Below are positions 7,774 to 52,700 of a stretch of DNA of 64,000 bases, one piece after another; the stretch's first letter is position 1; each line of letters opens with the position of its first letter. Source of the DNA: Bugula neritina. Taxonomy: Eukaryota > Animalia > Bryozoa. A program made the position numbers and the translations under genes. The notes under the pieces were generated by a model. That model did no database searches. It worked only from the letters and a program-made list of their open reading frames with translations, and was not told the origin of the DNA. Location: the NCBI GenBank assembly GCA_964035545.1, contig OZ037770.1, positions 5,528,729-5,592,728 on the forward strand, read 5' to 3'.

Positions 7774-8275
7774 GAAGAAATATGAATTAAAACTTGAATA
7801 AAAAGCCAGCAAAATATGTAATATTAATGCATGTAAATAATATTATTATAAATTTTTAATTGAATAAAGCAAGTGCAAAGCTGAACATTGTCAAAGCTTT
7901 ATAGTGCATAAAAGAAGCAGTGAAAAAACCTGTCAGTACAAAGTAATTAAAGCACACTCAACAACAAATTAACCAATATATAAATCAGTATGATATACTA
8001 GTTCGCAACAGTACAAGATATATAAATAGTAGATAAATAATCCACCAGATAGACAGCCTTAGCAACTGTCAGATTAACATAAACATATAATTATAGAGAA
8101 GTATGTATAAGAGTGGAAATCCTTTGTCAATTAAACTAATAGAATATCTATTCCTGATTATTTAACTTAAACTAATTGTTGGTTTAATTCAGCAGACCAT
8201 GCTGGATACCCAAAGAGGGCAAATGCTATGAGTTACATCATGTGCTAAATTTTAGGATTGATCCTCTTTAGTGGC

Positions 8276-10876
8276 TTAGGGTTTTTCCTCTTCATCCAAC
8301 CCATCAAAGCTAGGAAACAGGTAAAGTCTTTTACGGGGAGGAAGAGTCTTCCAGATTACAACCAAATTTCTGCTGCTCTCTGAATCTTCATCTGCATATA
8401 GTTTCTTCACTAATTTAGTCTGTACCTGTAGAGTAAGTAATGACTAGTAAGATTGTGTACCAATTTACTACCAGATGAGATAAATATTTACAACTCTTAG
8501 CTGCTGGAATATATATACCATCTTATTTGTATCAAATCTAAGCAGTAAAATCTTGAGAGTTGTCTGCTACAGTTAAAAATATAAGGTATATCATTGCAGT
8601 AAAACTAAGACAGTCTGTTGAAAATATCAATCAAAAATATGAATAATAAACAGCTGAAATAATAGAAATATAAAACCAGATTATTCAGCAAAATTATCAT
8701 TCTAGACTTACCTGCTTGAAAATGGTGTAGAGATCACGGTGACAGGCATGTTTGTAGATTGAAGCTACTAGAGCTCTAATCATGGGAGATCCATATTCAG
8801 GATGTCTCTTTGATGCTACAATAAAATTAAATGCAGCCAGAATTATGGTGTAATGAAAGCAAGCTCAGTATTTTAAAAAGTGTTTCTTTGATATACTTTT
8901 TAAAGACAAGTTTACAAGATTGGATTAAGAAGAGGCAATTTCCTAAATAACTGCAACTGCGCACATGTAAAACTAGCCAACAACTATTTAGTATACGTAC
9001 TGCAGACGTTACTCTTTAAAACAAGAAGATTATCAACATCTAGTCTGGTCCACCGCTCTTCTATTCTAGGTGCTGGTGGTAAGACAGGTCTGATGGGTCT
9101 TATTACACTGGGTGTTTCAGGATATACAATATCATCATCAGATTCAGAATGTGTAGATGAGACAGCTTCAGTTTCTTTTTCTTGAGCTGCTGCAATACCA
9201 GATCTGTCTGGATTCACATCAATGTTTGCTGCAACAAAAATTTTTTTAAGCTTGCATCTTGAGTAAAAAAGGAATTCAATCAATACAGAGAGAGCTTTTC
9301 AAAGATCTTTGTTCTACTTCCACAACTCGACTAAAAATAAAAATTTTCTATAAAACGCTGTAATTACCTCCACTGCAAGCTTCTAGGATGACAACTGTAG
9401 GTTTACGCTTTAGACTTAGAGGAGCGAGTAAATCGTACAAGTCTGTAAGATTGACCTTCTCAAGGTCAGTTCCGTAGATGCAGTTATCTTCTTCACCGTG
9501 ACTCATGACAACCAGCATGTGACAGCCCAAGCCGTTGTTTCTTTCATTTTTTATCTCGGACTTCACAGCAGACAGCATTTCCTACATTATTTTTATAAAA
9601 TGTTATTATATTGTAATGGATTTCAGATTATGTTATTATCGAAAGGATAACTCTTTGTGGCTTACTCTCTATACGCTTGGCATAATGGCTATAAGTACTG
9701 GAGATCAATTATCATAATAGCTGACAATTGGAATGCGTACAATCTGCTGGACAATTATTGCTAGCTACTAATGCACGCAGTTAAACAAGGCAAGACTAGT
9801 TAAATGGAATCAACAACTGTAGGAGGCGTAGATGGTTTGCACTGACAGTTAGCTGCTTAGTAGCAGATGCTAGTGTTATGCTTATGGTGATGGAGTTAAT
9901 TAGTAGCGACAGAGACGACTTGGCGTAGACGGTTACCCGACAATATCTTACAGTCGACAGTGGCACCACTAACGCTAGCCAATCAGGACAGTAACACTAA
10001 TTGATAGCAGGTGGAGCTAGCTACTCGTAGTTGCAGTGCGCTGAGTAGCTAGCCGGCAGAGCAGCTTGGGACTTCATTTAGAACAGTTGTGTATTAAAGC
10101 TCACTAATTATGTAATCGTTTTCTATTCATGCTAGCAGTAAATAACCTTCTTGTATTTGTGTAAATAATAAAGTATCTTATCGTAAACAACCTGTCGCAG
10201 TGGCTTTGTTTAAGTAGACCCACACATAATAATAGTGAACTGGCAAAATTCACTACAATATCTCTATAAATTGCTGCATTTTCTATATAATCCTGGCCCA
10301 TCAGCCATTTATAGCATAACTGCAACTTGACAATATTAGGAGGTTGCTAAATTTTGTTTCAATAGTAATAGGTATTTCAGTTGAAAAGCTAATACGTCAG
10401 CCAAGTTGAGCTGTGTAAGTAATAATAATCATACAGGTTAATGAGAGCTATCACTTAAATCAGTATGACTATTGATAACTATAAATATTGACTCACAAGC
10501 AAGTATGCCAAGATGTGCACCCATTTTAGCAAACCTTAAGTAATATTAGAACAGTGTGTAAGTTGAGCAAATACTGAAGAAAAAGCTTGACCATAAAAGT
10601 TTGAATACAGTTTCACACAAAAAGAATTTTAACTTCTTCAAAGAAATAGCATGCTACCATGTTTATAGTTCACTACTATTGCTGTATCATTCTAAAATAT
10701 TATACCTCTGCCTTTAGGTCTGTGTGTGTCTCAACATCAAACTTGAGAGATTTCAACATGGCAGACATATTCTCAACATCAGCATCTGAACCTTTCCTGC
10801 ATAAGTCTGGTCTTTTAGCAAAATGTTTGTTGTTTATGATCAGAGCTCTTCCTCTGTTTCTGGTCATACTGAACAC
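8276..10876 (-). CDS. Caspase catalytic domain (p20, linker, p10) exons of the ROCO-caspase gene
   Basis: Five exons: 10876-10706, 9581-9368, 9228-9001, 8815-8712, 8425-8276. Catalytic His in SHG (9495-9503) and Cys in EACSG (9369-9383). Both S1 arginine equivalents are present (CRKGS, SKRH). Confidence 0.9.
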
Positions 10877-13800
10877 CTGGAGGCAAGAATATTTAGAATG
10901 TCATGTACAGTGGTGACATGAATGTTTAATGAATAAATATTGGGAGCCAATTTGGCCGAGGCTCGCAATTATCAAATTATATTACGATCAAGTTTACTTT
11001 GAAAAGGAAGCAAATATTCTACATTCAGGTCTTTTTTATTACTAAGTTGAAAAATAAAGGAATAATTACAAGCGTAGGGCCACACGAAATCTTTTACACG
11101 CGGGTGACATGCGAGAAATCCCGTTTTGCTCAAAAATTGGACGTTGTGAGCAGGATTTTAATGTGTCTAGCATGCTGAGTGAAAAATGCGAGAAGCTCGT
11201 GCGTGTTTGATCTAATTGGCTTATTATTATTTAGCGTGCACACTTTTTTATTTCAATTTGAGTTTTAGCTTTTAGCAAACTGGAGTAAAACAGTTTTATA
11301 TAATTCGCATTTCCGCTTTGATAATATCTGTCGAACTTTCACCGCATTGGTAAAAACTGACAGCTGCGTTCAGAAATCAGACAGTTGTGACGTCACAGAG
11401 GTCAACGCTTAGCCTCGAAAACGCATTCAAAATGGCGTTTCGACGGTAGTGTGGCAGCCCCATAAATTCACTTTGCCGATGACTTAGTTTTATAAACAAA
11501 CGTGTAAAGGCAAGCAGTAAGGTTTAACGCTAACATTGTTAGCTAATAAATTTTTGCACTCACAACACATGCACTGTGCGTGGCATGTCTATACGGGCAC
11601 GGGTAAGGGTTTTCCCGCACGTCACGCGCATATAAAAGGCTTCGTATGGCCCTACGCTAACACTATAGTGTATTGATTGTCCAAACCAAAATGTCTAAAG
11701 ACGGCCGATAAACAATGTAATAACCTTGACAGTATTTGAAAAGAGTTGTTTAATCCTTGGGTTGCTGGTTGGCTTTAAGTTGAGTTTTATCAACTTCATA
11801 TCCTTGTCCTTCTCTTCACAAGTCTGTAAAACTTCATCGTCATCAGAGAGATCACTTAGATCATCAACCTCTGCAGTCACAAGATTTTATTGTCAATATT
11901 TGACAAACACAAGAAATTTGTTCATTGCATACAAATAAACATTAGATTTTGCCGGAAATAGCTTTGCTAAACTCGTCAAAGAAATTTACATGATCAGAAT
12001 TTCTATACTGTTTATACAGCTGTTTGAAATTAGTCAACAGCTTTTGCAATTTTTTTTTCTCTCAAACTTAACTCTATCCAGAAAAACAAAGCTAAGAATT
12101 AACTATACTGTAAAAGTTTACCAGTGAAGTCCTTCTGCTCTATTCTTCGTAGTTTGAGCTCTGCCAACAGTGTCTCCAACATACTAATTTTTGCTTTTGA
12201 CAACGCCTCACCTGAATAAAACTGATTAGATGAATTACCTTGACTATTACTTTGAATATAACTATAACTAGATATGTTTTACTACCAAATCTCAATATTG
12301 ACACAACTAAAGAATATGACGGATATAAAAAAAAGTTTTTAATTGAATAGTTCAAACTGATGATATATTCGGAAACACGATTAGGCAATGTTTGGTGTTA
12401 AATCTAGTTATGATGAATTCAAATTAGGAGTTCGTAACTTAAACAAACAACTCAAACTGACCTTGTGTACTTTCAACGTTTGAAAATGCATTGATGTTCA
12501 ATAAAAAAAGAAAGTTTCAGTAAAAATATTCATGACTTAACTTACATGGGTAGATTAAAGCACTGGGCACTTCCTCGTTGTTACACAATGTTGTTGAAGT
12601 TCCACTACATTTCTTTACATCTGGTGATGGGTTGCTTAAGGAACGAAGACACCAATTAGGACGAATGATTTTTTCAGGGCAAGAAACCCCAAGCATGATG
12701 CAGTGAGCACAGAAGCAGGCAGTGACTGGTCGACTAGCAGTCCAAGTTTCCATCACATGTCTGAGGATGTTGTTGTTGGTTGAAATAAGTTTCTCCCACA
12801 TCCTCGAAATGTGAGCAGCATCAGAAGACACATAGAGTAAGACTCTTCTTGATTTGCAGTCATGTATCAGCTGTGTGTATATTTGATCTTGGTAAACATT
12901 AACCCCATTTTTCTTTACCCTTCTCACAGCAAACTCCTCTGGAAACAGCTCTAGCAAACCCACAGTCATTTGGTGGTAGACATGCTGTGGTAATGCCAGA
13001 CCATTAAACTGTGTCTCAGCAACAAGTAACAGGTCTTTCGATGATGTGTAGGAAGTACAATATAGCTCCTTGGCAAACTGTGGAACAATGTAGTATGATT
13101 CTTTAGCATCATTTTCCAAAGGACCATACAGCAAACGGAATGTTCTGAGCAATGAAACAGCAATTTCAACATCACCAGAACTCTTGAAGGAAGTTTCGTC
13201 CGCAATCAAATATGTTAGAAGAGGTTGCATCATCATGCCACTAGTCTTGAAGCAATTGACAGATTTTTCAAAGTCTTGCTTTTCAATCCTGACTCCTTCT
13301 ATGGAATGATATGATTTGAACTGATCAACCCGACTCTGCCAAATTTTTGGGTCATGGTGATACAAAACACACAACAGTTTGGTTACTTCAGAAATCTTGT
13401 GAAATATGTATGGCCTGAGCGCATCAATATTCTTGTACCACAATACTTTACCGCAGTCATGCATGTATGTGAGAATAGTATCTAGCTGGCTTGGCTTCAG
13501 TTCAAAGCCGTCTTTTCTTAACACAAGCAGAATAAACCAAAAGGAGCAAAATGCTCCAGGTAAAGAGAAAACTTTTTCATTCACTATTTCCCATATCAAA
13601 GGCAAAGGCTTAACAAAATGCTGACTGCTCTCTAGAAGGGAGCTCTTTATCAGGTCGTACTCAGCATAGTCGTCTTCTTTTCCGATCTGATATATATCTT
13701 CACTGGCAAAAACCTTTCCATTCGATGAATTGAAATGCTGAATTTTCACAAATTCCCCATCTGAGCTTTTCTCTTCATCAAGAATTTCTTTGCACAGTTC

Positions 13801-16800
13801 ATCAGATACTCTAAGAAAATCGTCTTTTATTTGTTGACACTTCTCACTTTGAAACTTATCTTTGTGTGTGAAAACAAGTTTAGGTGGGCCAAGAGATGGA
13901 TGAGCGAGATAGAGGTGAGACATGAAGTCAAAGGCCAACTTTCTCACAGCCTCTCTGTTTGTAGATGCTTTCGAAATCTGATCATACTGCTCCATGTTGA
14001 CTACAATGACTGGTACACAATTCTGTCTCAGTGTCAAATGGTATGTGATATGGTAGACCTCCTGGCCTCCCATATCTATGAGACGAAGAGTTGTACCATC
14101 CACCTCCACCTCTTCCATATTAAACACTTTCGTGGTCTCATCATGTTCTGCATTCGAACTTCTCTTAGTCAGAACTCTCTTCCTGTCAGTGCTCTGTAAT
14201 GTTTTGATTAGACTGGTTTTACCTGCCATGGTGTTCCCTAATACCGCTATTGTAGCAAATGGCAAGTTTCTACCAGTGCCCTTGTCCAAATCTGTGTAGT
14301 ATTGTTGCACAGCATCTAGTCCTCTCTGACAAACTTCTAGTGGGGGAGATGTAAGAGCATCGCATTTGTTTATATTCAGTGTATGGAGATGTGTTAGCTG
14401 TAATATCTCAGGGTTCAAGGATGTCATGAATATGTTGAAGGAAAGATTCAGTGTTTGCAGATTACTCAACATGCACACTGAAGATGGCAAACTGATGAAG
14501 TTATTCATTGATATGTCTAGGGTCTGTAGCTCCTGCAGACTCTGCATCCTAATAATATATTATATTTTTATTACCAGCATAAACTAGAGGTAGTTGGTAT
14601 ACAATAATTAGGCTAGGTAGTATTGTATGATAGTGACTATAGTAAGCTCATATGAAACACTTTTAACTATCTAGCAATCAGCCTTATGGTAGCTACAGAA
14701 AACAAGTAGATATAAGCCACAATCATCATATTATATATACTGTATGTAAATTGGTGTTGTGTGTTGAGAGTAGAGACAAGGAGAATAAGTATTGGAAGAC
14801 TGGAAAAGGATATTAGAGAATGCCGACTTAAAAGTCAGCAGGTATAAAACTGTGTATGTATCTCCAGAAAAAGCAGTGATGACATAGGATTGATGGAATA
14901 TGATAGATCTGAACATTCCACTTTGATTCCAAAACCCACATTCAAATACCTGGAGAATATAATTCACCAGGAAGCAGAATGTAGAGGTACAGGTGCGCAT
15001 TGGTAACACCTAGGATAAATGGAGAGAACTGACTGAGGTAATATGTGACAATAAAGGAGAAATGAAGAGAGCTGACATAAAGGCAATAGGTGAGGGTACT
15101 GTCATAATAATTGTGTGATATATTTATGTATCATTATACACTGGCTAATTGACCTTTGGATTAGTTGACAAATATAACTGACCACAGAATCTATTGTTAA
15201 CCTAAGCCAGTCAGTAGGAGTGTACACATCAGATAGTCACCAAGTCTCTTAGCCCACAACTCTTTAGTCATTAGTAATGAAAGGGAAAGTCTGACATATC
15301 TCAACATAACTGTATGTTACCATGTTTTGTACCACATATAATATGAATGGTATAATTGATTTTGTCATTTTATCTTATATACAGTGTTGATGTAATAATA
15401 TGACTACATTATATAATTCATTTATATATGTCTTTTTTGTACCTGCAGGTTTAAATAATATAATATACATGCTTATAGTAACACTATAATAGAGGGTAAT
15501 GAATTTGTAAGTAAATATTATTATAGTCATTACATAATACATAAAAACAATATTATTACTCTGTGCGCCTGCATTCTGTTACTGCAATTTTTTATATTAT
15601 AGTTTATCATAGATCATGTGACCCTGAGTATTAAAATTTATGTTTTATTCAACAGGGTACTTGTTTCATGTCATCAATAAAGATAATCAGCGTTGTCAAA
15701 CCTTTGCATTGACTTGTAGTGAATACTAGCACAATGTAGTCTACTTTATTATAATAATATATACTGTATATATATGCTGCTTGTGCATTCAAACAATGAA
15801 TAGAGTTTAGGCAGCAATGCAAATTTCAAGTGCAGAGCTAATAAATCAAGAGAGCTATTGAGAATTCAACAGTAAATAAATACTAATCAACTATAAATGG
15901 CTGCTTTATTATAAATTATGAAGGTTTTCATATATATTTTATGACAAAATCTAAAACTATGTTATTTTCAAAATGTGAGAGACTATAATACGCATGTAAC
16001 TTCAAAAAAACTCCAGATTATATACCTTTATATTTTAACCTAGTAATATATAATGGGGTACTAATTGATATTATTTAGCATGCACATAAATATGTGAATT
16101 ACTGAATTTTTAAACAATACAAAATCTGTGAAACACAAACCTCTCAGGTAGAGTAGATAATTTACAGCTCCCCATATCCAACTCTTTAAGTGATGTGAGT
16201 GATGACACAACTTCTGGTACTGTGTTGAGAGGATTCCCTCCTATGACTAGTTTCTCTAACTGAGTCAGCTGACACAGACTGTAATATAAAGTGTGTGATA
16301 TATGCAATCCACTGTATCAGGATAATATATATACTGTATACATTTTTTGTGTATTCAAACCAGGTAAAAAATTCAAGTAATGCACTTACTGTTACAAGAC
16401 ACTACAAGAGGCTGTTCCATTATTAAATACAAAACTTTTTACTATAGAATGCTATATAATACCATAGCTTACAGCTGTGTTACTTCAAGGATATAACAAA
16501 CTATTACATGCCTTTGAAAAATTCACTTTATATTTTTAACCACAGCAACATATAATATAATATACTTCAATATTACTTTTTAAGCATATAAATATATGAA
16601 TGTCTCAGTTTTTGAAACAAGGAAAGCATACCATGACACTAGTACACTTACAAAACTACTAAATAGAATTTAGAATTCTAATCATATTTCAACAATAAAG
16701 CATTAAAATTTCACATACACTATAAAAGCCACTCAAAAGGAAGGAACTGAATACAAAACAATCAGCCTAAAGAAGTTTGTTGTAACCAAGTTATTTTGAA

Positions 16801-19800
16801 GATGTGAATTATTGAGTGCTTGAAACAATACAAAATCTGTGACACACAAACCTCTCAGGTAGAGTAGATAATTTACAGTTCCACATATACAACTCTTTAA
16901 GTGATGTGAGTGATGACACAACTTCTGGTACTGTGTTGAGAGGATTCCCTACTATGTGTAGTTTCTCTAACTGGGTCAGCTGACATAGACTGTAATATAA
17001 AGTGTGTGATACATCTAGTCTACTGCATCATAATTGCATAATTGCATCATATATTGTACACATTGCTTGTGTATTCAACCAAATAATTTATAAAAACCAA
17101 TTTGGTTGGGCAACAGATAGTTGAAGCAATCAAGGCATAAAGCTATGAAGCATACAATAGCTAGTTTTACTATTAAAAGACTGTTTCAATAATTACCATA
17201 ATTTTTTAAAGCATAATAATATGCTGTGACATGCCATCAAATTATGTCATTTACAGATTATGACTTATAACTACTATAGATAACCTCAAAAATATGGTTT
17301 TTAGCAAGGCAACATATGATAGGATACATCAACACTGTAGTGTTGAGTTTACCCAGTGTCTCCATGGTGTAATGATTAGTGTGCCTGCTTGCAAGGTATT
17401 AGGTATTAGGTATTAGGTTCAAATCCCAGTTGAAGCAAAGTTTGATAAGCACCATTCAGTGAGCGTATAAATATGTAAATTATTGAGTGTTTGAAACAAT
17501 ACAAAATCTGTGAAACACAAACCTCTCAGGTAGAGTAGATAATCTACATATCCACATATTCAACCTTTTAAGGGATGCGAGAGATGACACAACTTTTGGT
17601 ACTGTGTTGAGAGGATTCTCTCCTATGACTAGTTTCTCTAACTGAGTCAGCTGACATAGACTGTAATATAAAGTGTATGATATATCTAGTCTACTGTATC
17701 ATGATAATATAATATACTGTACACATTGCTTGTGTATTCAACCAAGTACTATATAGAAATAAATTTGGTTGAGCAACAGATAGTCAAAGCAATCAAGGCA
17801 CAAAGCTATGAAGCATACAACAGCCAGTTTTACTAGTAAATGACTGTTTCAATAATTACAAAGGATTTTGAACATATAATAATATGCTGTGGCACACCAT
17901 CAAATTACATCATTTACAGATTATGACCAAGTAATATAGATAACTTCAACAAATTCAGTCTTTTTAGCAAGGCAATACATGTTAGGAAACATCAACACTA
18001 TAGTACTGAGTTTACCCAGTGTCCCATGGTGTAACGATTAGTGTGCCTGCTTGCAAGCTGGAGGTCTTGGGTTCAAATCCAAGGTGGAATAAAAGTTTGA
18101 TAAACACCATTCGGTGAGCATATAAATATGTAAATTATTGAATGTTTGAAACAATACAAAAACTGTGACACACAAACCTCTCAGGTAGAGTAGATAATTC
18201 ACAGCTCCACATAATCAACTCTTTAAGTGATGTGAGAGATGACACAACTTTTGGTACTGTGTTGAGATGATTATCTCCTATGTCTAGTTTCTCTAACTGA
18301 GTCAGCTTACATAGACTGTAATATAAAGTGTGTGATATATCTAGTCTACTGTATCACAATAATATAATATACTGTATACATTTCTTGTGTATTCAACCAA
18401 GTACTATATAGAAATAAATTTGGTTGAGCAACAGATAGTCAAAGCAATCAAGGCACAAAGCTATGAAGCATACAACAGCCAGTTTTACTAGTAAATGACT
18501 GTTTCAATAATTACAAAGGATTTTGAACATATAATAATATGCTGTGGCACACCATCAAATTACATAATTTACAGATTATGACCAAGTAATATGAATAACC
18601 TCAAAATGCAGTCTTTTTAGCATGACAATATATGTTAGGAAACATCGACACTATAGTACTGAGTTTACCCAGTGTCCCATGGTGTAACGATTAGTGTGCC
18701 TGCTTGCAAGCTGGAGGTCTTGGGTTCAAATCCAAGGTGGAATAAAAGTTTGATAAACACCATTCGGTGAGCATATAAATATGTAAATTATTGAATGTTT
18801 GAAACAATACAAAAACTGTGACACACAAACCTCTCAGGTAGAGTAGATAATTTACAGTCCCACATATTCAACTCTTTAAGTGATGTGAGTGATGACACAA
18901 TATCTGGTACTGTGTTGAGAGGATTATTTTCTATGTTTAGTTTCTCTAACTGAGTCAGCTGACACAGACTGTAATATAAAGTGTGTGATATATCTAGTCT
19001 ACTGTATCACAATAATATAATATACTGTATACATTTCTTGTGTATTCAAACCAAGTAAAATATGCAAGAAACATACTTATTGTTGCATAGAACAGCAAAG
19101 AGTTTTTGCTATATTATGTTGTAGGTGAGGAGAGGAAGCTTCATTATGCAAGGTTAGCTGTTAGCTTATAGTACATAAGGCCCCATTCTACACGCTAGGT
19201 AAGTTAATTTGATGACTAAATTGTAATGTAATATATTTGTAGTTTACGACATAAAGTAGCCTTTTCTATACTACTATAAACTGTGAATTACTTCAGTTTT
19301 CAGCTACATAAAACATGATTTATTTAATGCTATCAAATAGCAGTATACAGGCAGCTTTAAACCCTCTAGTTTCTACAACCAGCTTACTTGGTATAGGTAC
19401 AATGTTGCGCATTACACTATGTTAATGTGTATGCATTTTATTATTCAATAAATAACACAAATGAACTCATTTAACATTTACACAGCTATTTTAATAGACA
19501 CTCACTTGTCCAGACTTGCTCTGTCAGTCAGGTAAGAAACACATAGACGCAGGGCTTTACCAGCAATTTCTCCAATGTTACTTGGAATTGTTCCCTCCAG
19601 TTTGAGATCTATGATATCATAATTCCCAACTTCACGTTTTACCTCAGCAGTAGTATATGACTTGGTATTAGCATACCATTCATCTGACCAGCTCACAGGA
19701 GGCTGTCCAGAATGTCTGAACCAGATTTCCATATTCTCTGTAACATTATACAGTGACAGTGTGATTATTACACAGTGCTAGCAGGTGGTGTCTATCATTC

Positions 19801-20539
19801 TGACACTTGTCATCTACAGTTTGAATATATTTATTATATGGTGGATGTCAATATTCATATCTATAACTAAATTACACATATTTTAATGAGTAGCTTTAGA
19901 CTCTTCATAATAAGTCATTTTGTGTATAATTTCTAGAGCAGTGTTGATTACTTTGCGATAAGACAACTTTAACCAAGCTGCTTGCATTATTTTACATATT
20001 ATATAACTTTTCAAAGCATCAGGTTAATTGTTAGCATAAACAAGTATAGGAGCTAGTGAAAATGTTTTTATATAATGTTTTTTTATATATAATTGGTTGT
20101 TTTATAATGTTTATAAATATAATCTAATATATTGAATTGGCATAACACCTACATTTACTTATCTGTTACCTTTCATACTTGAAGGTTTACATACATGTAC
20201 TAAAGAGTTGGACATACAAACATTGCCTCTACGTAAAGACAACAATCAATAGTGATGGATACATTCAAACGTCTGCATGTTTTTCACATTAGCATTTGAT
20301 GTGAAAGTTAAAATTTAATAATCTTACATTATTTTTACATCTAAAACTACAGTTTGATATATTACTCATATTTGAGCAATATAATTATATAATATGATAA
20401 TATATAATATAAATATAATAATCAACATTATACAAAGTTTTATAATAATTTTCATGCTATTATCAGTGTTGAAGTGTTTTTATTGTCCAGAAATAAATGA
20501 ATAAAGTAGTTGTTAAATTCACTCACCACCAGTTGCCAT
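8276..20539 (-). CDS. LRR-Roc-COR (ROCO, MFHAS1-like) protein with a C-terminal caspase (peptidase C14A) domain, about 1346 aa, 15 coding exons
   Basis: Exons 5'->3' on -: 20539-20527 (MATG), 19737-19506, five LRR exons (18968-18831, 18315-18178, 17660-17523, 16989-16852, 16278-16141), 14548-12546 (LRR cap, Roc, COR), 12211-12122, 11870-11725, 10876-10706, 9581-9368, 9228-9001, 8815-8712, 8425-8276 (TAA). All junctions are GT-AG with matching phases. Total is 4041 nt, 1347 codons, with no internal stop. Roc motifs: GNTMAGKTS, DMGGQ, THKD. Caspase motifs: RGRALIINN...RKGSDADVENM, VMSHG, ILEACSG, SKRHPEYGSPMIRAL, KRLYLFP. Confidence 0.88.
11072..11657. mobile_element. MITE, PIF/Harbinger-like, in an intron of the ROCO-caspase gene
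   Basis: Imperfect TIRs of about 50 bp (GCGTAGGGCCACACGAAATCTTTTACACGCG... / ...CGCGCATATAAAAGGCTTCGTATGGCCCTACGC). Flanks are CAA/TAA, a near-match 3-bp TSD. The TIR start resembles the 25695/39502 family. Confidence 0.8.
12546..14548 (-). CDS. 2003-bp exon encoding the terminal LRRs/LRR cap, Roc GTPase and COR domain
   Basis: Corresponds to ORF 12517-14547. It contains LQTLDISMNN/LQTLNLSFN repeats, the SPPLEVCQRGLDAVQQYY cap typical of ROCO proteins, P-loop GNTMAGKTS (about 14212-14238), DMGGQ, THKD and COR-type LTYMHDCGKVLWY and YYIVPQF. Acceptor TAG at 14549-14551, donor GTAAGT at 12540-12545. Confidence 0.92.
14751..15055 (+). mobile_element. Degenerate RTE-clade LINE reverse-transcriptase fragment (intronic)
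   Basis: With frameshifts and a stop, it reads LVLCVESRDK...LEDWKRILENADLKVSRYKTVYV...FKYLENII...EVQVRIGNT*DKWRELTEVICDNK. This is the characteristic RTE/BovB-like RT C-terminal pattern (LExWRxxLExxGLKVSRxKTEY; FKYLG; RIxxxWxKWRxxxGVLCDK). Confidence 0.8.
17357..17440 (+). mobile_element. tRNA-derived SINE head (degenerate, internal GGTATTA triplication) in an LRR cassette intron
   Basis: A-box-like TGGTGTAATGA and B-box GGTTCAAATCC. Paralogous to the copies at 18020 and 18673. Confidence 0.6.
18020..18090 (+). mobile_element. tRNA(Ala-TGC)-like SINE head in an LRR cassette intron
   Basis: A box TGGTGTAACGA, anticodon-like loop CTTGCAAG, B box GGTTCAAATCC. The acceptor stem does not pair, so this is not a functional tRNA. 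Confidence 0.65.
18673..18743 (+). mobile_element. tRNA(Ala-TGC)-like SINE head in an LRR cassette intron
   Basis: Identical to 18020-18090, carried along by the cassette duplication. Confidence 0.65.
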
Positions 20540-21379: not shown

Positions 21380-23177
21380 TGTAGAATATTAGTGCAAGGT
21401 AGAATATTAGTGTAAGGTAGAATATTAGTGTAAGGTAGAATATTAGTGTAAGGTAGAGTATTAGTGTAAGGTAGAGTATTAGTGTAAGGTAGATATTTAG
21501 TGTAAGGTATACTTTTAGTGCAAGGTAGAATATTAGTGTAAGGTAGAATATTAGTGTAAGGTAGAGTATTAGTGTAAGGTAGACTATTAGTGTAAGGTAG
21601 AGTATTAGTGCAAGGTAGAATATTCGTGCAAAGTAGAATATTAGTGTAAGGTAGATAATTGGTATAAGGTAGAATATTCGTGCAAGGTAGAATATTAGTG
21701 TAAGGTAGAGTATTAGTGCAAGGTAGAATATTCGTGCAAGGTGGAATATTAGTGTAAGGTAGAATATTAGTGCAAGGTAGACTATTAGTGCAAGGTAGAG
21801 TATTAGTGCAAGGTAGAATATTAGTGTAAGGTAGAATATTAGTGTAAGGTAGAATATTAGTGTAAGGTAGAGTATTAGTGTAAGGTAGAGTATTAGTGTA
21901 AGGTAGATATTTAGTGTAAGGTATACTTTTAGTGCAAGGTAGAATATTAGTGTAAGGTAGAATATTAGTGTAAGGTAGAGTATTAGTGTAAGGTAGACTA
22001 TTAGTGTAAGGTAGAGTATTAGTGCAAGGTAGAATATTCGTGCAAAGTAGAATATTAGTGTAAGGTAGATAATTGGTATAAGGTAGAATATTCGTGCAAA
22101 GTAGAATATTAGTGTAAGGTAGAGTATTAGTGCAAGGTAGAATATTCGTGCAAGGTGGAATATTAGTGTAAGGTAGAATATTAGTGCAAGGTAGACTATT
22201 AGTGCAAGGTAGAGTATTAGTGCAAGGTAGAATATTCGTGCAAAGTAGAATATTAGTGTAAGGTAGATAATTGGTATAAGGTAGAATATTCGTGCAAGGT
22301 AGAATATTAGTGTAAGGTAGAATATTAGTGTAAGGTAGAATATTACTGTAAGGTATGATATTAGTGTAAGGTAGAATATTAGTGCAAGGTAGACTATTAG
22401 TGTAAGGTAGATTGTTAGTGTAAGGTAGAATATTAGTGTAAGGTAGACTATTACTGTAAGGTAGAGTATTAGTGTAAGGTAGAATATTAGTGTAAGGTAG
22501 ACTACTACTGTAAGGTAGAATATTAATGTAAAGTAGAATATTAGTGTAAAGTAGAATATTAGTGTAAGGTAGAATATTAGTATAAGGTAGACTTTTAGTG
22601 CAAGGTAGAATATTAGTGCAAGGTAGAGTATTAGTGTAAGGTAGAATATTAGTGTAAAGTAGACTATTAGTGTAAGGTAGAATATTAGTGTAAGGTAGAC
22701 TATTAGTGTAAGGTAGAGTATTAGTGTAAGGTAGAATATTAGTGTAAGGTAGACTACTACTGTAAGGTAGAATATTAGTGTAAAGTAGAATATTGGTGTA
22801 AGGTAGAATATTAGTGTAAGGTAGGATATTAGTGCAAGGTAGAATATTAGTGTAAGGTAGAATATTAGTGTAAGGTAGATTATTAGTGTAAGGTAGACTA
22901 TTAGTGTAAGGTAGAATATTAGTGCAAGATAGACTATTAGTGTAAGGTAGAGTATTAGTGTAAGGTAGATTATTAGTGTAAGGTAGACTACTACTGTAAG
23001 GTAGAATATTAGTGTAAAGTAGAATATTAGTGTAAGGTAGAATATTAGTGTAAGGTAGAATATTAGTGTAAGGTAGACTACTAGTGTAAGGTAGATTATT
23101 AGTGTAAAGTAGAATATTAGTGTAAGGTAGAATATTAGTGTAAGGTAGGATATTAGTGCAAGGTAGAATATTAGTGC
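21380..23177. repeat. 18-bp minisatellite (TAGAATATTAGTGTAAGG)n, about 100 copies, with an internal higher-order duplication of about 414 bp
   Basis: Clear 18-nt periodicity. The variant unit GTATACTTTTAGTGCAAG recurs at 21507 and 21921. This array explains the spurious ORF 21318-23204. Confidence 0.95.
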
Positions 23178-27140: not shown

Positions 27141-27666
27141 AGTGTAAGGTAGATTATTAGTGTAAGGTAGAATATTAGTGTAAGGTAGAATATTAGTGTA
27201 AGGTAGAATATTAGTGTAAGGTAGAATATTAGTGTAAGGTAGAATATTAGTGTAAGGTAGAATATTAGTGCAAGGTAGAGTATTAGTGTAAGGTAGAGTA
27301 TTAGTGCAAGGTAGACTATTAGTGTAAGGTAGAATATTGGTGTAAGGTAGACTATTAGTGTAAGGTAGACTATTGGTGTAAGGTAGAATATTAGTGTGAG
27401 GTAGAGTATTAGTGTAAGGTAGAGTATTAGTGCAAGGTAGACTATTAGTGTAAGGTAGAATATTGGTGTAAGGTAGACTATTAGTGTAAGGTAGACTATT
27501 GGTGTAAGGTAGAATATTAGTGTAAGGTAGAATATTAGTGTAAGGTAGAATATTAGTGTAAGGTAGAATATTAGTGTAAGGTAGAATATTAGTGTAAGGT
27601 AGACTATTAGTGTAAGGTAGACTATTGGTGTAAGGTAGAATATTAGTGTAAGGTAGACTATTAGTG
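27141..27666. repeat. Second array of the 18-bp minisatellite (TAGAATATTAGTGTAAGG)n
   Basis: Same unit as 21380-23177 and followed by the same ~390-bp flank. Confidence 0.95.
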
Positions 27667-28737: not shown

Positions 28738-31009
<2,272 letters not shown>

Positions 31010-46700: not shown

Positions 46701-49700
46701 ATTCTAGTTAGTATTCTGAAATCTTAGGAATTGATGATTAAAATGAATGACTGTTTAATTGATAGCAGACAGAACTGGACTTTTCAGCCAGCAGCCAGTT
46801 AATTACATTAGACAACTCCCTAAGTAGTTGTGACTAGACATGGGATTAGCCTGTGTAACCTACCATCATCCACTCTCTCCGGTTTGCGGTGGGGTAATGT
46901 AAGAGCTCCGTTGATGGAGCCATTGGCTGCCGACTTACTGCTGCCTTCTTGCGTGACGACAGCCCGGATCACTTTCATAGGCAGCACGTCACCAGCTCTC
47001 TTTATGCACTCCACGGTTTCCTCATGACTGCACGTCGCTACGTTCTTCCCGTCAATCTAGGTTAAATATGATGTAGAGTTACTTTCAAGCCAACAAAGTG
47101 AAGAAGTTATTATATAAAATGATCTACTTTTGTGTGCTTTAAATTTCCAATAGAAGTTAATGCAAGGAACGCAGCAAACGTGTCAATGAGAATCGATGTT
47201 GTTCAGAGTGAATATTACCTCCAGCAAGAAGTCACCAGCTCTGAGTCCGGCTTTATCAGAAACGCTGCCTTTCTCCACGCTGTCAAGGTATTGTAAGGCC
47301 GGCATCTTTTCAGACGGAATAAACTCGACGTTCAGTTTCTTCAGTTGTTCAGCTAAAAGAAGAGAGAGAATTTGGTGAGCTGATATATTGACACTAATGC
47401 CCTGAAGTTACCAGAAGGGAGAGACCTCATTACAGGACAGAGAGTAGAACCTGGAAGGGTTGGCTAGTGGTAATGTAACTTCCTCCCAGCAGTGAAGTAA
47501 TTATCATTAAAACATTTTGCATCAATTAGAAGTCCATTACCTGACTTAAAGATTCATGATATTCTGCACTACTCAACCAACACTTGAGTACTGCAGCTGG
47601 TAAATGATATCTACTAAAGCACCATGTAACCACTTATAATTAGAATTCTTAAAAACAGGTTTTATTATAAAACTGGTCAGCCCTCTGGTAATACATAACC
47701 TTAAATTATACTTTGGAAATTAAAATAATTAGAGAGGTAATTGGTTTTGAGATTACAATAATTAATTTGATTTGCATTAATGCTAGCCCATAATGATCTT
47801 GGCCAATAGAAATTAGTCCAGGGGAAGGCCTGGGTTTCAGCAGTGTCTCTTAGACAAAGAATGACAGGTCTTGCAAGGTAGCCTTTTCCAGTGAAAGAAG
47901 AGTACTTAATGCCACCTGCCAGTTACTCTAACAGTCTCCCAACTCTTATTGTCACTTACACTGATAATGAATGGAATTTACTACTCCATGCTTATTTATG
48001 CAAAGAAATCTTACAACCCTTGTTACTTGAAACAAAACATGACACTGTCCCTTAACACATCACATTCTATTTTTTTGCTTTGTATAGGAAATTAGCTGAT
48101 TCCTATCTAAGCAACCTTAACTTAATTCTGGGTATGTTAGCATTAATTTTCAATTATACGAGAACCCCTAATGGTAATATTAGAGAGAGCAGATGCTGCA
48201 GGTAAAATATTTGCCCCCCCCCCCCAACTAGCAAGTGAACTAACCATTACATCACAGGGGCCACTGGGTAATCCCAACATTACACTATAGTGTATACAGT
48301 ATAGGGTATGGTATAGTGTATAGTGTATAGGGTATGGTATACTGTATAGTGTATAGGATATGGTATACTGTATAGGGTATAGGGTATAGGATATGGTATA
48401 CTGTATAGTGTATAGGATATGGTATAGTGTATAGTGTATAGTGCATGGTATAGTGTATTATAGGGTATGGTTTAGTGTATAGTGTATATGATAGTGTATA
48501 GTGGCTCACCCTATACACTATACAGTATAACACATGCTACATGGTATGCATATGTCTGGCACACAAGGTAAAGCAAACACTGCATGACCATCATTTAAGG
48601 AGCTCTGAATATAGAATGTCACTAATTAGTATAGTAGTGTAAGACAACATTACTTAAAGTAGCCTCATTAGTAATGCTATACTGCAGGGTAGTATATACC
48701 CCAGGCAGCAGTATATACCTGAGGCAGCAGTATATACCTCAGGCAGCAGTATATACCTGAGGCAGCATTATATACCTGAGGCAGCAGTATATACCTCAGG
48801 CAGCAGTATATACCTGAGGCAGCAGTATATACCTCAGGCAGCATTATATACCTGAGGCAGCAGTATATACCTCAGGCAGCAGTATATACCTGAGGCAGTA
48901 GTATATACCCCAGGCAGCAGTATATACCTCAGGCAGCAGTATATACCTCAGGCAGCAGTATATACCTCAGGCAGCAGTATATACCTGAGGCAGCAGTATA
49001 TACCTCAGGCAGCAGTATATACCTGAGGCAGCAGTATATACCTCAGGCAGCATTATATACCTGAGGCAGCAGTATATACCTCAGGCAGCAGTATATACCT
49101 CAGCAGCATTATATACCTCAGGCAGCAGTATATACCTCAGGCAGCAGTATACATGTTAAATAAGCTTACAAATTATGATATTGTTGTTGCACACAATAGT
49201 CCAGAGTGGAAATATGAACTGTCGCACCAGTTGACTATGAAAGCAGTTGTGAACAGTTTGAATACATGTGTTTATACAGAATATTACCCTACAAATGCAG
49301 CTAGTGTTTTATACTAATCACTTGCCATGAAAACAGGGTGAGGTAATACAGCTGATATTAATTTCATTAAGGAAAGTTTTCGAAAAGAAACCCATTACAA
49401 ATGTACCAGAAGGTATGCCCTTAGATTATATAATTCCAGCTACCATTGAAAACATTTAAACTGAATTGTAACAAATTTGAAGCAAATGAAGGTGTATTTT
49501 CATGTAAAAGAGTGACTACACTATAAAGTGTATTGCTGAAATGCTTGTGGTTCATTTTAAACTTTTAGCAAAACTTTAGCCTAAACAATCAAAGGTAAAG
49601 ACTGATATAACGACCCTTCTGTGCTAGCCAAAGGAACTCAACAGAATTTCCAATACCCAATAAAACAGAGGCAAATAATATTCATAAAACAAGTACTTTT

Positions 49701-52700
49701 AAAAGTGAAATAATTCAACACGCAACTCACCTTTAGCACCTCTGAGAACGAATCCATACCCCTTCTTGGTTCTGGAGAGCACCACTGTCCTCACCCCCTC
49801 ACCCCTGTAAGAGACACCAGACCCTATACACTTAGCATAGTTCCTAGCTTCTGTTACAGTAGTTGGTACGAAGCAGTTAGCTAACCGGCCACTAGCACTG
49901 CTATGTAGATGTATAGGTTCACACTCTATACTATCAAGGCTACTATACTCCATGCTTTTACTCTGGACTACCATAGCCATAGCAGTCTGCTTTGCTTTTT
50001 GCTTTCGAAATTTTTTAAGCATAATGTTCATTGTGAACCGCTCTTAGTCACTCAGGTTGTACTTAAAAACTCTAAGTAATACATGAATTTTCTAAGTAAA
50101 TCATCCAAGAAGCAGAAGTCCTGCAAAACCAATTTTTAAATTCACAAAAGTGTTAGTAAATTATAAAGATTTGCTGCTCTACACCTCTGTACTGTCAACT
50201 ACAAGTTCGGATTAATTTCAACTGCTGACTGGTATTTTTGTTGTAGTGTAGGAAATCAATGATGGATAGTTAATCAGGGTAAGTTACCTCTATTCAAACA
50301 ACCACATCAATAATTCTAATTAGAGTGAAGTTACAGCATGTGATAAGACACCCAACTTCTTCAATTATGATATACAGGACAATGAAACAAGAGAAATAAT
50401 TATATTAAGCAGGAAAAGATGGGAAACCTATACACCATTTACACATGACTGACACAAAAGGTCATCTGCTGAGAGTAGATGAGCAGATGACAAATCAAAA
50501 TGGCTGCCATTTAGCAGACGAAGAGGTATAATATTCATGTCATTGTGATGCTTGTAACTATGGCAACAGCATTGTATTTAAATTCGGTATGATTTGTACC
50601 AACTTTTATAAGCCCTGCAGGAAAGGGTGGGCTAATAATATTTACTATTAGTGAACTTCGTATCTTGGTCTACTTAACTGTGTACAACCTGTGACCTTGT
50701 AAACTTAAAGTGTTTCCACAGAAACTAAACAGTTGCTAAAATCAATTGGAGTCCTGTATTCCTATTTTACTGGGGCACAATTAATTATTTATATAGCAGT
50801 TTCCATTACAGCATGCCTAGCTTAAGGACATGAGATCATGGCTCAGTGAACTGCAGGTATGAAAGTACTTATATTATTGGTGGAGAGGTGACCAATCAGA
50901 ATCTTACAAAAATTCTGAGCATTATAATTATATTTTAATGTTATAATTAATTAAAAGCTGTTCCATTGAGTCTAAAAGAAACATCTATTTCAACAATACA
51001 CCCTATTAATAACACTTGGTGTGAATCAATGAACTTTGAAGGCATTATGGTGGCCGCAAATTCCACTTTAAATATAAGTAGTACTTGAATAGTTTTTTCA
51101 ACTAACAACTGCTCAAATATAACTGGTTAAATAGAAAAAATTCAGTATTCAGATGCAAAGCGACATGGCAGTGCAGGTGCTAAAAGTGCTTTCTCCTGTC
51201 AACTAATTGTCAACAAATACTATTGTGTCTCAATTACTAATCAATAGTGAAATAAAGAAAAGGTAATTTAGAAGAATTGTACAAAACCAAATAAAAAATA
51301 ACACTATGGTGGCGATTTGATAGGCATATTACTGCTTGCTCATTCATTACATTCAGCATTGATATGCATAACTGCTTAATGCAATGAATACCCTCAGCTA
51401 GTGCTTGCTAGTGACAGACATGACATTGATGAATTTGACTCATAACTCATAAATAGATTTGAAATGGAAGGCAAGGATTTAGAGTGACTGCATGGACAAG
51501 TGTTCAAGAGTTGTTTTAAACAAAGTATGAAAATAAAAAAGCAGAAAAGACAGTGTTTGTTTAGCTAAAAAAGCTGCACAGAAGAGCATAAATAAGTGAA
51601 CAAGTTGTAGTAACTAAAGAAGCTCCACCTTGTGGCAGGGGATGAGCCTGTCAGTGTGGCATTTCCTAAGATAACTAATCACTACGAGATCATAGATAAC
51701 GCAACAGATTTAAACTTTTACTAAAACAAGATACCTATCAGTAACTATTGATTATTGGTGGATAGAAGCTAGTTGAAATATAACATCTCTTGATTAAATT
51801 GCGTTGTAAGTAAGTTGCAAGGAATGTAATCTACAGCAAAAAAGCAAAAAGTATGACTATGCAATGAGTGATGCTAAACAACTAGAGAGAATATTCATTT
51901 TGTATAAATAGTCTTCCAGTTAGCTTTATCAATTTTAGTGATGAAAAGTAATATATCGTGATGGTCGTCAACTTCCACTAAAATTCTATTTAAATTTACT
52001 TAAGACAGCTCTAGCTGTGCTCGCTACAAATACTAATCTAATGAATTTTATCTGATAAATATTTCATGATACAGTTATTCTTTCAACAGAAATCTCTTTG
52101 ATTTCTCTAACAATGCAATCATACTCTGAAAACTAACTGTAGTCTATTATTGCAACGATTGACCAGCTCAATGCAAACAACTGGAAACAATTGACTAATT
52201 AACATAATAAGGCTGACATTTTCAACTCCTTCAAGCATTTGGATCAGATCCAAATGTTATGCAATAGGCACATATTAAAGGCAATATTCAGGTATGCATT
52301 TCAATTACTTGAGACTACATTGTATGTTAGATAAACACGAAACAATGTAGCCAGTTATGAGCCATTAAGAAAGATCAAAGCAAGATCTGGTTTCAAAAAG
52401 GATTAGAGAGTTAATGATTAAATACAGAATAACTCAGTTCATGTCTGTAAATATTAATTATATCAGTAAGCCCCTCAGTAGATAGCTAGGTGAATAAAGC
52501 AACTATTGAACAGGTAAATATGGCAAATCAACCAGGATGAGGTGCAGTCACAGCAGTGCTTTCACTGTAAACTCCTTTAGTTAGATGTTGGCTTATTATT
52601 TTATACAAAAGTTGGCTAAAAAAATTCCAGAAAAAACTTCTAGAAACTCAGAACTGAGAAGGCTTGAAAATCCTGCTAATGAGTAGTTGAACCAGATCGA

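What the first reader, a model, noticed from the sequence alone, without database searches (positions are those of the whole stretch)
8276..20539. Single-chain LRR-Roc-COR-caspase: candidate self-contained sensor, GTPase switch and protease receptor
Seen: 15 phase-matched exons give one uninterrupted ~1346-aa frame with about 13 LRRs, an intact Roc GTPase, COR, an acidic linker and a full caspase p20/p10 with the His-Cys dyad. No CARD, DED or death domain is recognisable. Established: well-known animal ROCO proteins end in kinase/WD40 (LRRK1/2), a death domain (DAPK1) or nothing (MFHAS1). Roc-COR modules dimerise in a nucleotide-dependent way, and initiator caspases are activated by induced dimerisation, normally through death-fold adaptors. 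Inference: ligand binding at the LRRs could drive Roc-COR dimerisation and activate the fused caspase directly, an NLR/apoptosome-like circuit built on a GTPase in one polypeptide. I do not know of a characterised animal protein with this architecture, but I cannot search to confirm novelty.
Basis: partly seen in the sequence, partly recalled or inferred. Interest (0 to 1): 0.92.

Follow-up and report, generated by a model that had tools for sequence, protein, structure and literature searches.

The report
Bryozoan LRR-Roco GTPase fused to caspase
This moss-animal gene splices a fast-changing recognition surface, a GTP switch and a cell-death-type protease into one protein, and it is one of about 107 such genes in the genome, so it looks like a large, untested family of single-chain immune receptors whose design was so far catalogued only in bacteria and glimpsed in amphioxus.

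Summary
Confirmed. Fifteen minus-strand exons give one 1346-aa frame: about 13 LRRs, Roc with intact G1-G4, COR, a Cys-rich tail, a disordered acidic linker and a caspase with His1143/Cys1184. RNA contigs from four studies join Roc-COR to the caspase exons; none shows read-through to the stop at 12517. They may come from alleles or close paralogues. The genome is almost certainly Bugula neritina. The gene is not a one-off: 108 of 111 Roc exons have a caspase exon just downstream; at least 65 keep the catalytic Cys and 9 carry Ser. LRRs sit in 138-nt phase-2 cassette exons whose binding-face codons changed 16 times, all amino-acid-changing. The architecture is not unprecedented: it occurs in Watersipora and amphioxus ('LRRs-caspase', Zhang 2008) and is catalogued in bacteria (Kaur 2021); trees favour separate origins. 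I found no paper on the bryozoan expansion. Best reading: a diversified innate-immune sensor-protease, with probable decoy copies. Ligand, protease activity and switch direction are untested; in the bacterial model Roco, GTP breaks the dimer. The scan noted this family before at two other loci of this genome.

The parts
20527..20539 (-). Exon 1, start codon (aa 1-4)
   Evidence: not tested by RNA
19506..19737 (-). Exon 2, N-terminal cap of the LRR array (aa 5-82); no Pfam match
16141..18968 (-). Exons 3-7: five 138-nt phase-2 cassette exons, two LRRs each, in about 650-bp tandem exon+intron units; changes concentrated on six beta-strand face codons (16 non-synonymous, 0 synonymous)
12546..14548 (-). 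Exon 8 (2003 nt): three last LRRs and cap, Roc GTPase, COR, Cys-rich CxHC...C tail
14215..14238 (-). Roc P-loop GNTMAGKT (Lys422); G3 DMGG at 14076-14065 and G4 THKD at 13869-13858 also intact
12122..12211 (-). Exon 9, linker helix after the Cys-rich tail
11725..11870 (-). Exon 10, disordered acidic linker with conserved DLSDLSD motif (candidate Asp cleavage site), then a helix leading into the caspase
10706..10876 (-). Exon 11, caspase large subunit start, S1-pocket Arg1085
9368..9581 (-). Exon 12, caspase catalytic His1143 (9500-9498) and Cys1184 (9377-9375, EACSG)
9001..9228 (-). Exon 13, inter-subunit linker with an acidic Asp cluster, then the start of the small subunit
8712..8815 (-). 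Exon 14, caspase small subunit with S1 Arg1266 (GSPM in place of GSWF)
8276..8425 (-). Exon 15, end of small subunit and stop codon

Best explanation
A member of a bryozoan-expanded family of intracellular innate-immune receptors built as LRR sensor - Roc-COR GTPase switch - caspase effector on one chain. Shown: the spliced architecture (family level), intact GTP-binding and His-Cys motifs, about 107 paralogues, variable numbers of LRR cassette exons under diversifying selection, and a minority of Cys-to-Ser copies. Inferred: the LRR face binds a foreign or danger ligand, or reads allorecognition cues in a colonial animal; this changes the nucleotide and oligomer state of Roc-COR; two tethered caspase domains meet across the flexible acidic linker, dimerise, self-cleave at the inter-subunit Asp cluster and perhaps at DLSD, and cut death or inflammatory substrates. 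Cys-to-Ser paralogues would act as cFLIP-like partners or decoys. The direction of the switch is open: activation could follow GTP hydrolysis and re-dimerisation rather than GTP loading.
For: RNA joints across COR-linker-caspase in four studies. 108 of 111 Roc exons paired with a caspase exon within 20 kb, same strand. dN/dS 0.14-0.30 for exon 8 and 0.15-0.47 for the caspase core against 18-19 paralogues. LRR face codons 16N/0S against 10N/4S in the other 39 codons, p 4e-8; exon 3 vs 4 differ by 10.4% while the adjacent introns differ by 2.7%, p 4e-4. About 805 LRR-exon candidates; 5 cassettes here, at least 13 upstream of another paralogue. Same architecture in Watersipora and in other probable bryozoan contigs. 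Related invertebrate Rocos carry CARD, Death or GT4 in the same C-terminal slot, tying this slot to effector and caspase signalling. Bacterial LRR-Roc-COR-effector proteins are proposed counter-invader systems. Caspase folds with high confidence behind a disordered linker in the Watersipora homologue.
Against: No ligand, activity, infection-induced expression or phenotype is available. The caspase deviates from the canon: EACSG (Gln283 position is Glu, His or Gln across paralogues), GSPM for GSWF, and no QxP before the last strand. C. tepidum Roco monomerises on GTP. The monomer model (pTM 0.69) says nothing on dimer geometry. RNA evidence is from short contigs at 90-99% identity that cannot separate allele from paralogue.
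Confidence: 0.62

Rival explanations
1. Same sensor family, but the caspase domain works mainly as a non-proteolytic scaffold or allosteric partner for conventional caspases or NF-kB adaptors, or has non-Asp specificity.
For: Nine paralogues have Ser for the catalytic Cys, reached by two different codons (AGC in 7, TCC in 2), most in open frames; pentapeptide variants EACSG, HACSG, EVCSG, ETCSG; altered small-subunit motifs.
Against: At least 65 of the 74 called paralogues keep Cys, His is kept in all loci read, and both S1 arginines are present here and in Watersipora.
Confidence: 0.17
2. An active sensor-protease used in colony biology rather than anti-microbial defence: allorecognition at colony contact, polypide degeneration and brown-body cycles, or control of the bacterial symbiont.
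For: Bryozoans are colonial and recycle zooids by programmed degeneration (own knowledge); diversifying LRRs fit allorecognition as well as pathogen sensing; high contig depth in a run labelled symbiont metagenome (depth is a poor measure).
Against: Tandem birth-and-death clusters of about 107 genes, and parallel fusions in solitary amphioxus and in bacteria, fit host-invader conflict better.
Confidence: 0.15
3. Two adjacent genes (an MFHAS1-like Roco ending at the stop at 12517 and a separate caspase), or a decaying duplicate.
For: The exon 8 frame runs on to a stop at 12517; some Watersipora models are annotated as Roco-only or caspase-only.
Against: RNA joints skip the stop and depth in that intron is zero; phases match; linkage holds in 108 of 111 paralogues; full-length RefSeq models exist in Watersipora; purifying selection throughout.
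Confidence: 0.04

Closest known systems
Bacterial LRR + AP-GTPase (Roc) + COR + caspase counter-invader proteins (Kaur et al. 2021, PMC8195603)
   Same: Identical domain order; fast-evolving LRRs; caspase among at least 24 alternative C-terminal effectors; several paralogues per genome.
   Different: Bacterial and computationally predicted; this one is an intron-rich animal gene with a metazoan-type p20/p10 caspase and an animal MFHAS1-like Roco core.
Amphioxus 'LRRs-caspase' genes (Zhang et al. 2008, PMC2575513); e.g. XP_002614028 / BRAFLDRAFT_67388
   Same: LRR-Roc-COR-Cys tail-caspase on one chain, 11 database proteins across Branchiostoma species; proposed shortcut from recognition to apoptosis.
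   Different: The paper does not mention Roc-COR, and I could not confirm that its models are these genes. Amphioxus copies have QACRG and sit scattered in an amphioxus-only Roco clade whose other members end in GT4, OTU or Death; trees reject one clade with the bryozoan genes (Roc-COR p-AU 2e-51, caspase p-AU 0.019).
MFHAS1 (MASL1) and invertebrate LRR-Roc-COR-CARD/Death Rocos
   Same: LRR-Roc-COR core; nearest Atlas structure is the MFHAS1 cluster; databases name the bryozoan proteins MFHAS1 homologues.
   Different: MFHAS1 has no effector; the relatives end in CARD or Death adaptors instead of the protease itself.
Brown algal ROCO candidate immune receptors (PMC11378527)
   Same: Expanded Roco family with LRRs on phase-2 cassette exons under shuffling and diversifying selection.
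   Different: One LRR per 72-nt exon against two per 138-nt exon here; mostly no effector, none with caspase.
NLR inflammasome / Apaf-1 apoptosome / DISC with cFLIP
   Same: Logic of repeat sensor, NTPase switch and proximity-activated caspase, with inactive caspase homologues (own knowledge).
   Different: STAND ATPase wheels and death-fold adaptors are absent; a Roc-COR GTPase and a covalent tether replace them.

Membership tests
ROCO GTPases | Roc domain with G1, G2, G3, G4 motifs | tested here: met
   Pfam Roc above cut-off; GNTMAGKT, DETT, DMGG, THKD conserved across the family
ROCO GTPases | COR directly after Roc | tested here: met
   Pfam COR-A only weak (E 0.009), but the fold matches LRRK1, LRRK2 and C. 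tepidum Roc-COR and the isolated COR structure 3dpt
ROCO GTPases | GTP binding, hydrolysis and nucleotide-dependent monomer-dimer cycle | not testable with these tools
   Needs biochemistry; precedent in PMC5714945
Caspases (peptidase C14A) | p20/p10 fold | tested here: met
   Pfam on exons 11, 12, 14; PDB matches to CED-3 and caspases 3, 6, 7, 8; confident fold of the Watersipora homologue
Caspases (peptidase C14A) | His-Cys dyad | tested here: met
   SHG His1143 and Cys1184 align with CED-3
Caspases (peptidase C14A) | QACxG pentapeptide and full S1 pocket (Arg179, Gln283, Arg341) | tested here: inconclusive
   Both arginines present, Gln replaced by Glu (EACSG); 14 paralogues and Watersipora P0094 have QACSG
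Caspases (peptidase C14A) | Asp-specific proteolysis, activation by dimerisation | not testable with these tools
   Needs an assay
Initiator caspases with death-fold prodomain | CARD, DED or DD before p20 | tested here: not met
   No Pfam hit on exons 9-10; linker is one helix, a disordered stretch and one helix
NLR / STAND receptors | NACHT or NB-ARC ATPase | tested here: not met
   The nucleotide-binding domain is Roc; works like an NLR at most
Amphioxus LRR-Roco-caspase group (orthology) | One clade with the bryozoan genes | tested here: not met
   AU tests reject; reference sampling for caspases is thin
Bacterial LRR-AP-GTPase-COR-effector systems | Domain order LRR-Roc-COR-variable effector | tested here: met
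   (analogy of design)
Bacterial LRR-AP-GTPase-COR-effector systems | Descent from the bacterial caspase-fused genes | not tested
   No bacterial caspase-fused sequence was in the trees; the caspase is metazoan-type and the gene has 14 introns, which argues against recent transfer

The most novel reading that the evidence does not exclude
Cheilostome bryozoans run a major intracellular immune or allorecognition repertoire on about a hundred adaptor-free, GTPase-gated caspase receptors, diversified by LRR cassette-exon duplication and module swapping and tuned by repeatedly evolved dead-caspase decoys: a GTP-switch counterpart of the inflammasome that arose separately in bryozoans, amphioxus and bacteria.
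Probability: 0.4. Interest if true: 0.85.

Novelty: new variant of a known kind. Interest (0 to 1): 0.64.

Why it matters
No LRR-Roc-COR-caspase protein has been tested in any paper I could find. A natural fusion with a protease read-out makes two open questions directly testable: what the Roc-COR nucleotide cycle does to a tethered effector (the unresolved point for LRRK2 and DAPK1), and whether LRR-Roco proteins are ligand receptors at all. The family also gives a first concrete handle on bryozoan immunity, with about 107 natural variants, including dead copies, as built-in controls. The domain combination itself is already catalogued, which caps the surprise.

Tried and rejected
Assembly or prediction artefact: rejected by RNA joints, 108 linked paralogues and Watersipora models. 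Two-gene model: rejected. Hidden death fold in the linker: rejected. Orthology with amphioxus fusions: rejected under the sampled trees. 'Architecture never seen': rejected. Literature searches for Roc-COR with caspase in animals, bryozoan caspase or LRR expansions, and lophotrochozoan caspases found no description; the library lacks most subscription journals, and Huang et al. 2008 on amphioxus was not held. The bivalve caspase and Flustra genome papers do not mention it. The joined 15-exon protein was not sent to any search or folding tool; exons were searched by reference, and the COR-to-caspase arrangement was folded on the Watersipora homologue P0115. The joined frame was used only inside local scripts (frame check, caspase tree).
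Full report
Observation. The minus strand of 8276-20539 holds 15 exons with AG/GT ends and matching phases; joined in a script they give 1346 codons and a single terminal stop (exon 4 corrected to 18315-18178). Searched exon by exon, exons 3-7 are LRRs, exon 8 has LRR, Roc (E 2.4e-7) and weak COR-A, and exons 11, 12 and 14 match Peptidase_C14. An AlphaFold model of exon 8 built on 74 relatives (pLDDT 90.9, pTM 0.87) matches LRRK1, the Chlorobium tepidum LRR-Roc-COR and LRRK2. The G1-G4 motifs and a CxHC...C tail are conserved across the family. His1143 and Cys1184 align with the CED-3 dyad, both S1 arginines are present, but the pentapeptide is EACSG and the small subunit has GSPM for GSWF. 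The joined protein was not sent to any search or folding tool; it was used only inside local scripts.

Is it one transcript? Contigs of four probable RNA runs from four studies were laid on 8150-14050. They show joints matching 12546/12211 and 11870/12122 in three runs, 11725/10876 and 10706/9581 in all four, 9368/9228 in two and 9001/8815 in one. One 396-nt contig holds both the end of the Roc-COR exon and exon 10. Depth at 12287-12483, inside the intron that contains the stop at 12517, is zero in all four. Limits: the runs are guessed to be RNA, the contigs are short and mostly 90-99% identical, so they may be alleles or the three closest paralogues (92-94% protein identity); the LRR-side junctions were not tested. 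The fusion is therefore shown at family level and very likely for this gene.

Organism. The assembly is 216.0 Mb with large contigs C1-C9, matching the published Bugula neritina assembly of 216.00 Mb and 9 chromosomes (PMC11480708); the nearest named relatives are from the bryozoan Watersipora subatra. This identification is inference, not a label given by a tool.

A large family. A Roc segment finds 111 matches and caspase exon 12 finds 130. 108 Roc matches have a caspase exon on the same strand within 20 kb downstream (107 distinct; mostly 3-5 kb), in clusters on C1 (40), C6 (38) and C7 (10). These are lower bounds. Of 20 close loci read, 18 have an open exon 8 and 18 show the caspase exons within the 10 kb fetched. 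Pattern searches call the catalytic codon for 74 Roco-linked genes: 65 Cys (EACSG 15, QACSG 14, HACSG 13, EVCSG 12, ETCSG 7, others 4) and 9 Ser, by AGC in 7 and TCC in 2, which implies two separate losses; 37 Roc matches stay uncalled because the list was cut or the motif differs. Against paralogues, dN/dS is 0.14-0.30 for exon 8 and 0.15-0.47 for the caspase core. Among C6 paralogues caspase dS (0.18-0.38) is far below Roc-COR dS (0.6-0.86), and C1 genes with equally related Roc-COR exons (66-67%) carry either a 63% or a 39% identical caspase exon: modules are being homogenised or swapped between copies (inference).

The sensor end. Exons 3-7 are 138-nt phase-2 cassettes, two LRRs each, duplicated with their introns. 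The six exposed beta-strand codons carry 16 non-synonymous and no synonymous changes, against 10 and 4 in the other 39 codons (p 4e-8); exons 3 and 4 differ by 10.4% while the neighbouring introns differ by 2.7% (p 4e-4). The genome has about 805 candidates for such exons; this gene has 5 and another has at least 13. The same cassette size occurs in Watersipora. This is the pattern expected of a ligand-binding surface under diversifying selection, and parallels brown algal ROCO genes (PMC11378527).

Relatives. Watersipora RefSeq proteins XP_067947674 (1419 aa) and XP_067948342 (1413 aa) are full LRR-Roc-COR-caspase chains, and further Watersipora and metagenome loci have the caspase exons downstream. 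The acidic linker motif (DLSDLSD here, SDVSD in Watersipora) is conserved. A model of the Watersipora protein from the last LRRs to the end shows Roc-COR, one helix, a 30-residue disordered acidic stretch, a helix and a well-folded caspase, with no death fold. Amphioxus has 11 database proteins with LRR, COR and caspase, inside a larger amphioxus Roco family whose other members end in GT4, OTU or Death. Other invertebrate Rocos end in CARD or Death. In the Roc-COR tree the bryozoan genes form one clade (100/100) and the amphioxus caspase-bearing genes are scattered among amphioxus non-caspase genes; one clade of all caspase-bearing genes is rejected (p-AU 2e-51). The caspase tree rejects it weakly (p-AU 0.019, few reference caspases). 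Separate fusions are the simplest reading; an old fusion with many losses is not excluded.

What is published. Kaur et al. 2021 describe bacterial LRR + AP-GTPase + COR proteins with at least 24 C-terminal effectors including caspase, as predicted counter-invader systems (PMC8195603). Zhang et al. 2008 report amphioxus 'LRRs-caspase' genes as possible direct links from pathogen recognition to apoptosis, without mention of Roc-COR (PMC2575513); I could not confirm that these are the same models. I found no paper on the bryozoan family or any experiment on such a protein, within a library that lacks most subscription journals.

Mechanism. Most likely (0.62): an intracellular immune receptor in which ligand binding at the LRR face shifts the Roc-COR nucleotide and oligomer state, brings two tethered caspase domains together and triggers self-cleavage and downstream death or inflammatory cleavage; Ser copies act as decoys or modulators. 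Architecture, motif integrity, selection and copy number are shown; ligand, proteolysis, cleavage sites and the decoy role are inferred from initiator-caspase and cFLIP biology (own knowledge). Rivals: non-proteolytic scaffold (0.17), colony-biology or allorecognition role (0.15), two genes or decay (0.04).

Verdict. Real, expressed at family level, and larger than first described. A new variant of a known design: not categorically new, but uncharacterised and strikingly expanded. The scan reached a similar reading before at two other loci of this genome and noted the LRR cassettes of this very gene; those are AI notes, consulted after my own tests of splicing and family size, and not counted as evidence. 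Interest 0.64.

Noticed in passing
G000 C6 clusters (e.g. L009, L010, L011, L017, L014, L016): Nine Roco-linked caspases have Ser in place of the catalytic Cys, by two different codons; candidate pseudo-caspase decoys.
   Followed up: partly
G000 C1:33.8-35.1 Mb and C6:2.5-6.3 Mb: Roc-COR and caspase modules show discordant divergence between paralogues (caspase dS far lower on C6; two caspase subtypes on similar Roc-COR exons on C1), suggesting module swapping or gene conversion.
   Followed up: partly
G000 C6:6.03-6.12 Mb: At least 19 LRR cassette exons spread over about 90 kb upstream of a single Roc exon; either a very long LRR array or orphan cassette pools without their own Roc-COR exon.
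   Followed up: no
G000 C9:9.32-9.41 Mb, C2:30.51-30.55 Mb and others: 23 related caspase exons with no Roc exon found upstream, several in tandem clusters with QACSG; possible source lineage of the fused caspase or more distant Roco genes.
   Followed up: no
P0265, P0266, P0268; L030:8001-10718: Single-ORF proteins joining an LRRC8/pannexin-like membrane region, LRRs and a caspase domain, from ENA metagenome contigs of unknown organism: a channel-caspase fusion.
   Followed up: partly
P0264: Mind-bomb SH3 repeat + ankyrin + caspase fusion from a Logan contig.
   Followed up: no
P0188, P0190, P0199, P0159, P0195 (Lingula): A clade of invertebrate LRR-Roc-COR-CARD proteins; one also has an N-terminal HEPN domain.
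   Followed up: partly
window 28865-31007: Perfect (AC)n run of 2.1 kb; also 18-bp satellite arrays at 21381-23176 and 27141-27666 just upstream of the gene.
   Followed up: no
window 35000-64000, minus strand: Fragments of another multi-exon gene: a PDZ-like start at 49699-50031 that recalls Shank proteins (from memory; no Pfam hit) and an 860-aa low-complexity ORF at 52848-55430.
   Followed up: no
window about 11050-11640 and 9700-10320: Intronic stretches with high contig depth in RNA runs, probably dispersed repeats or small transposons.
   Followed up: no
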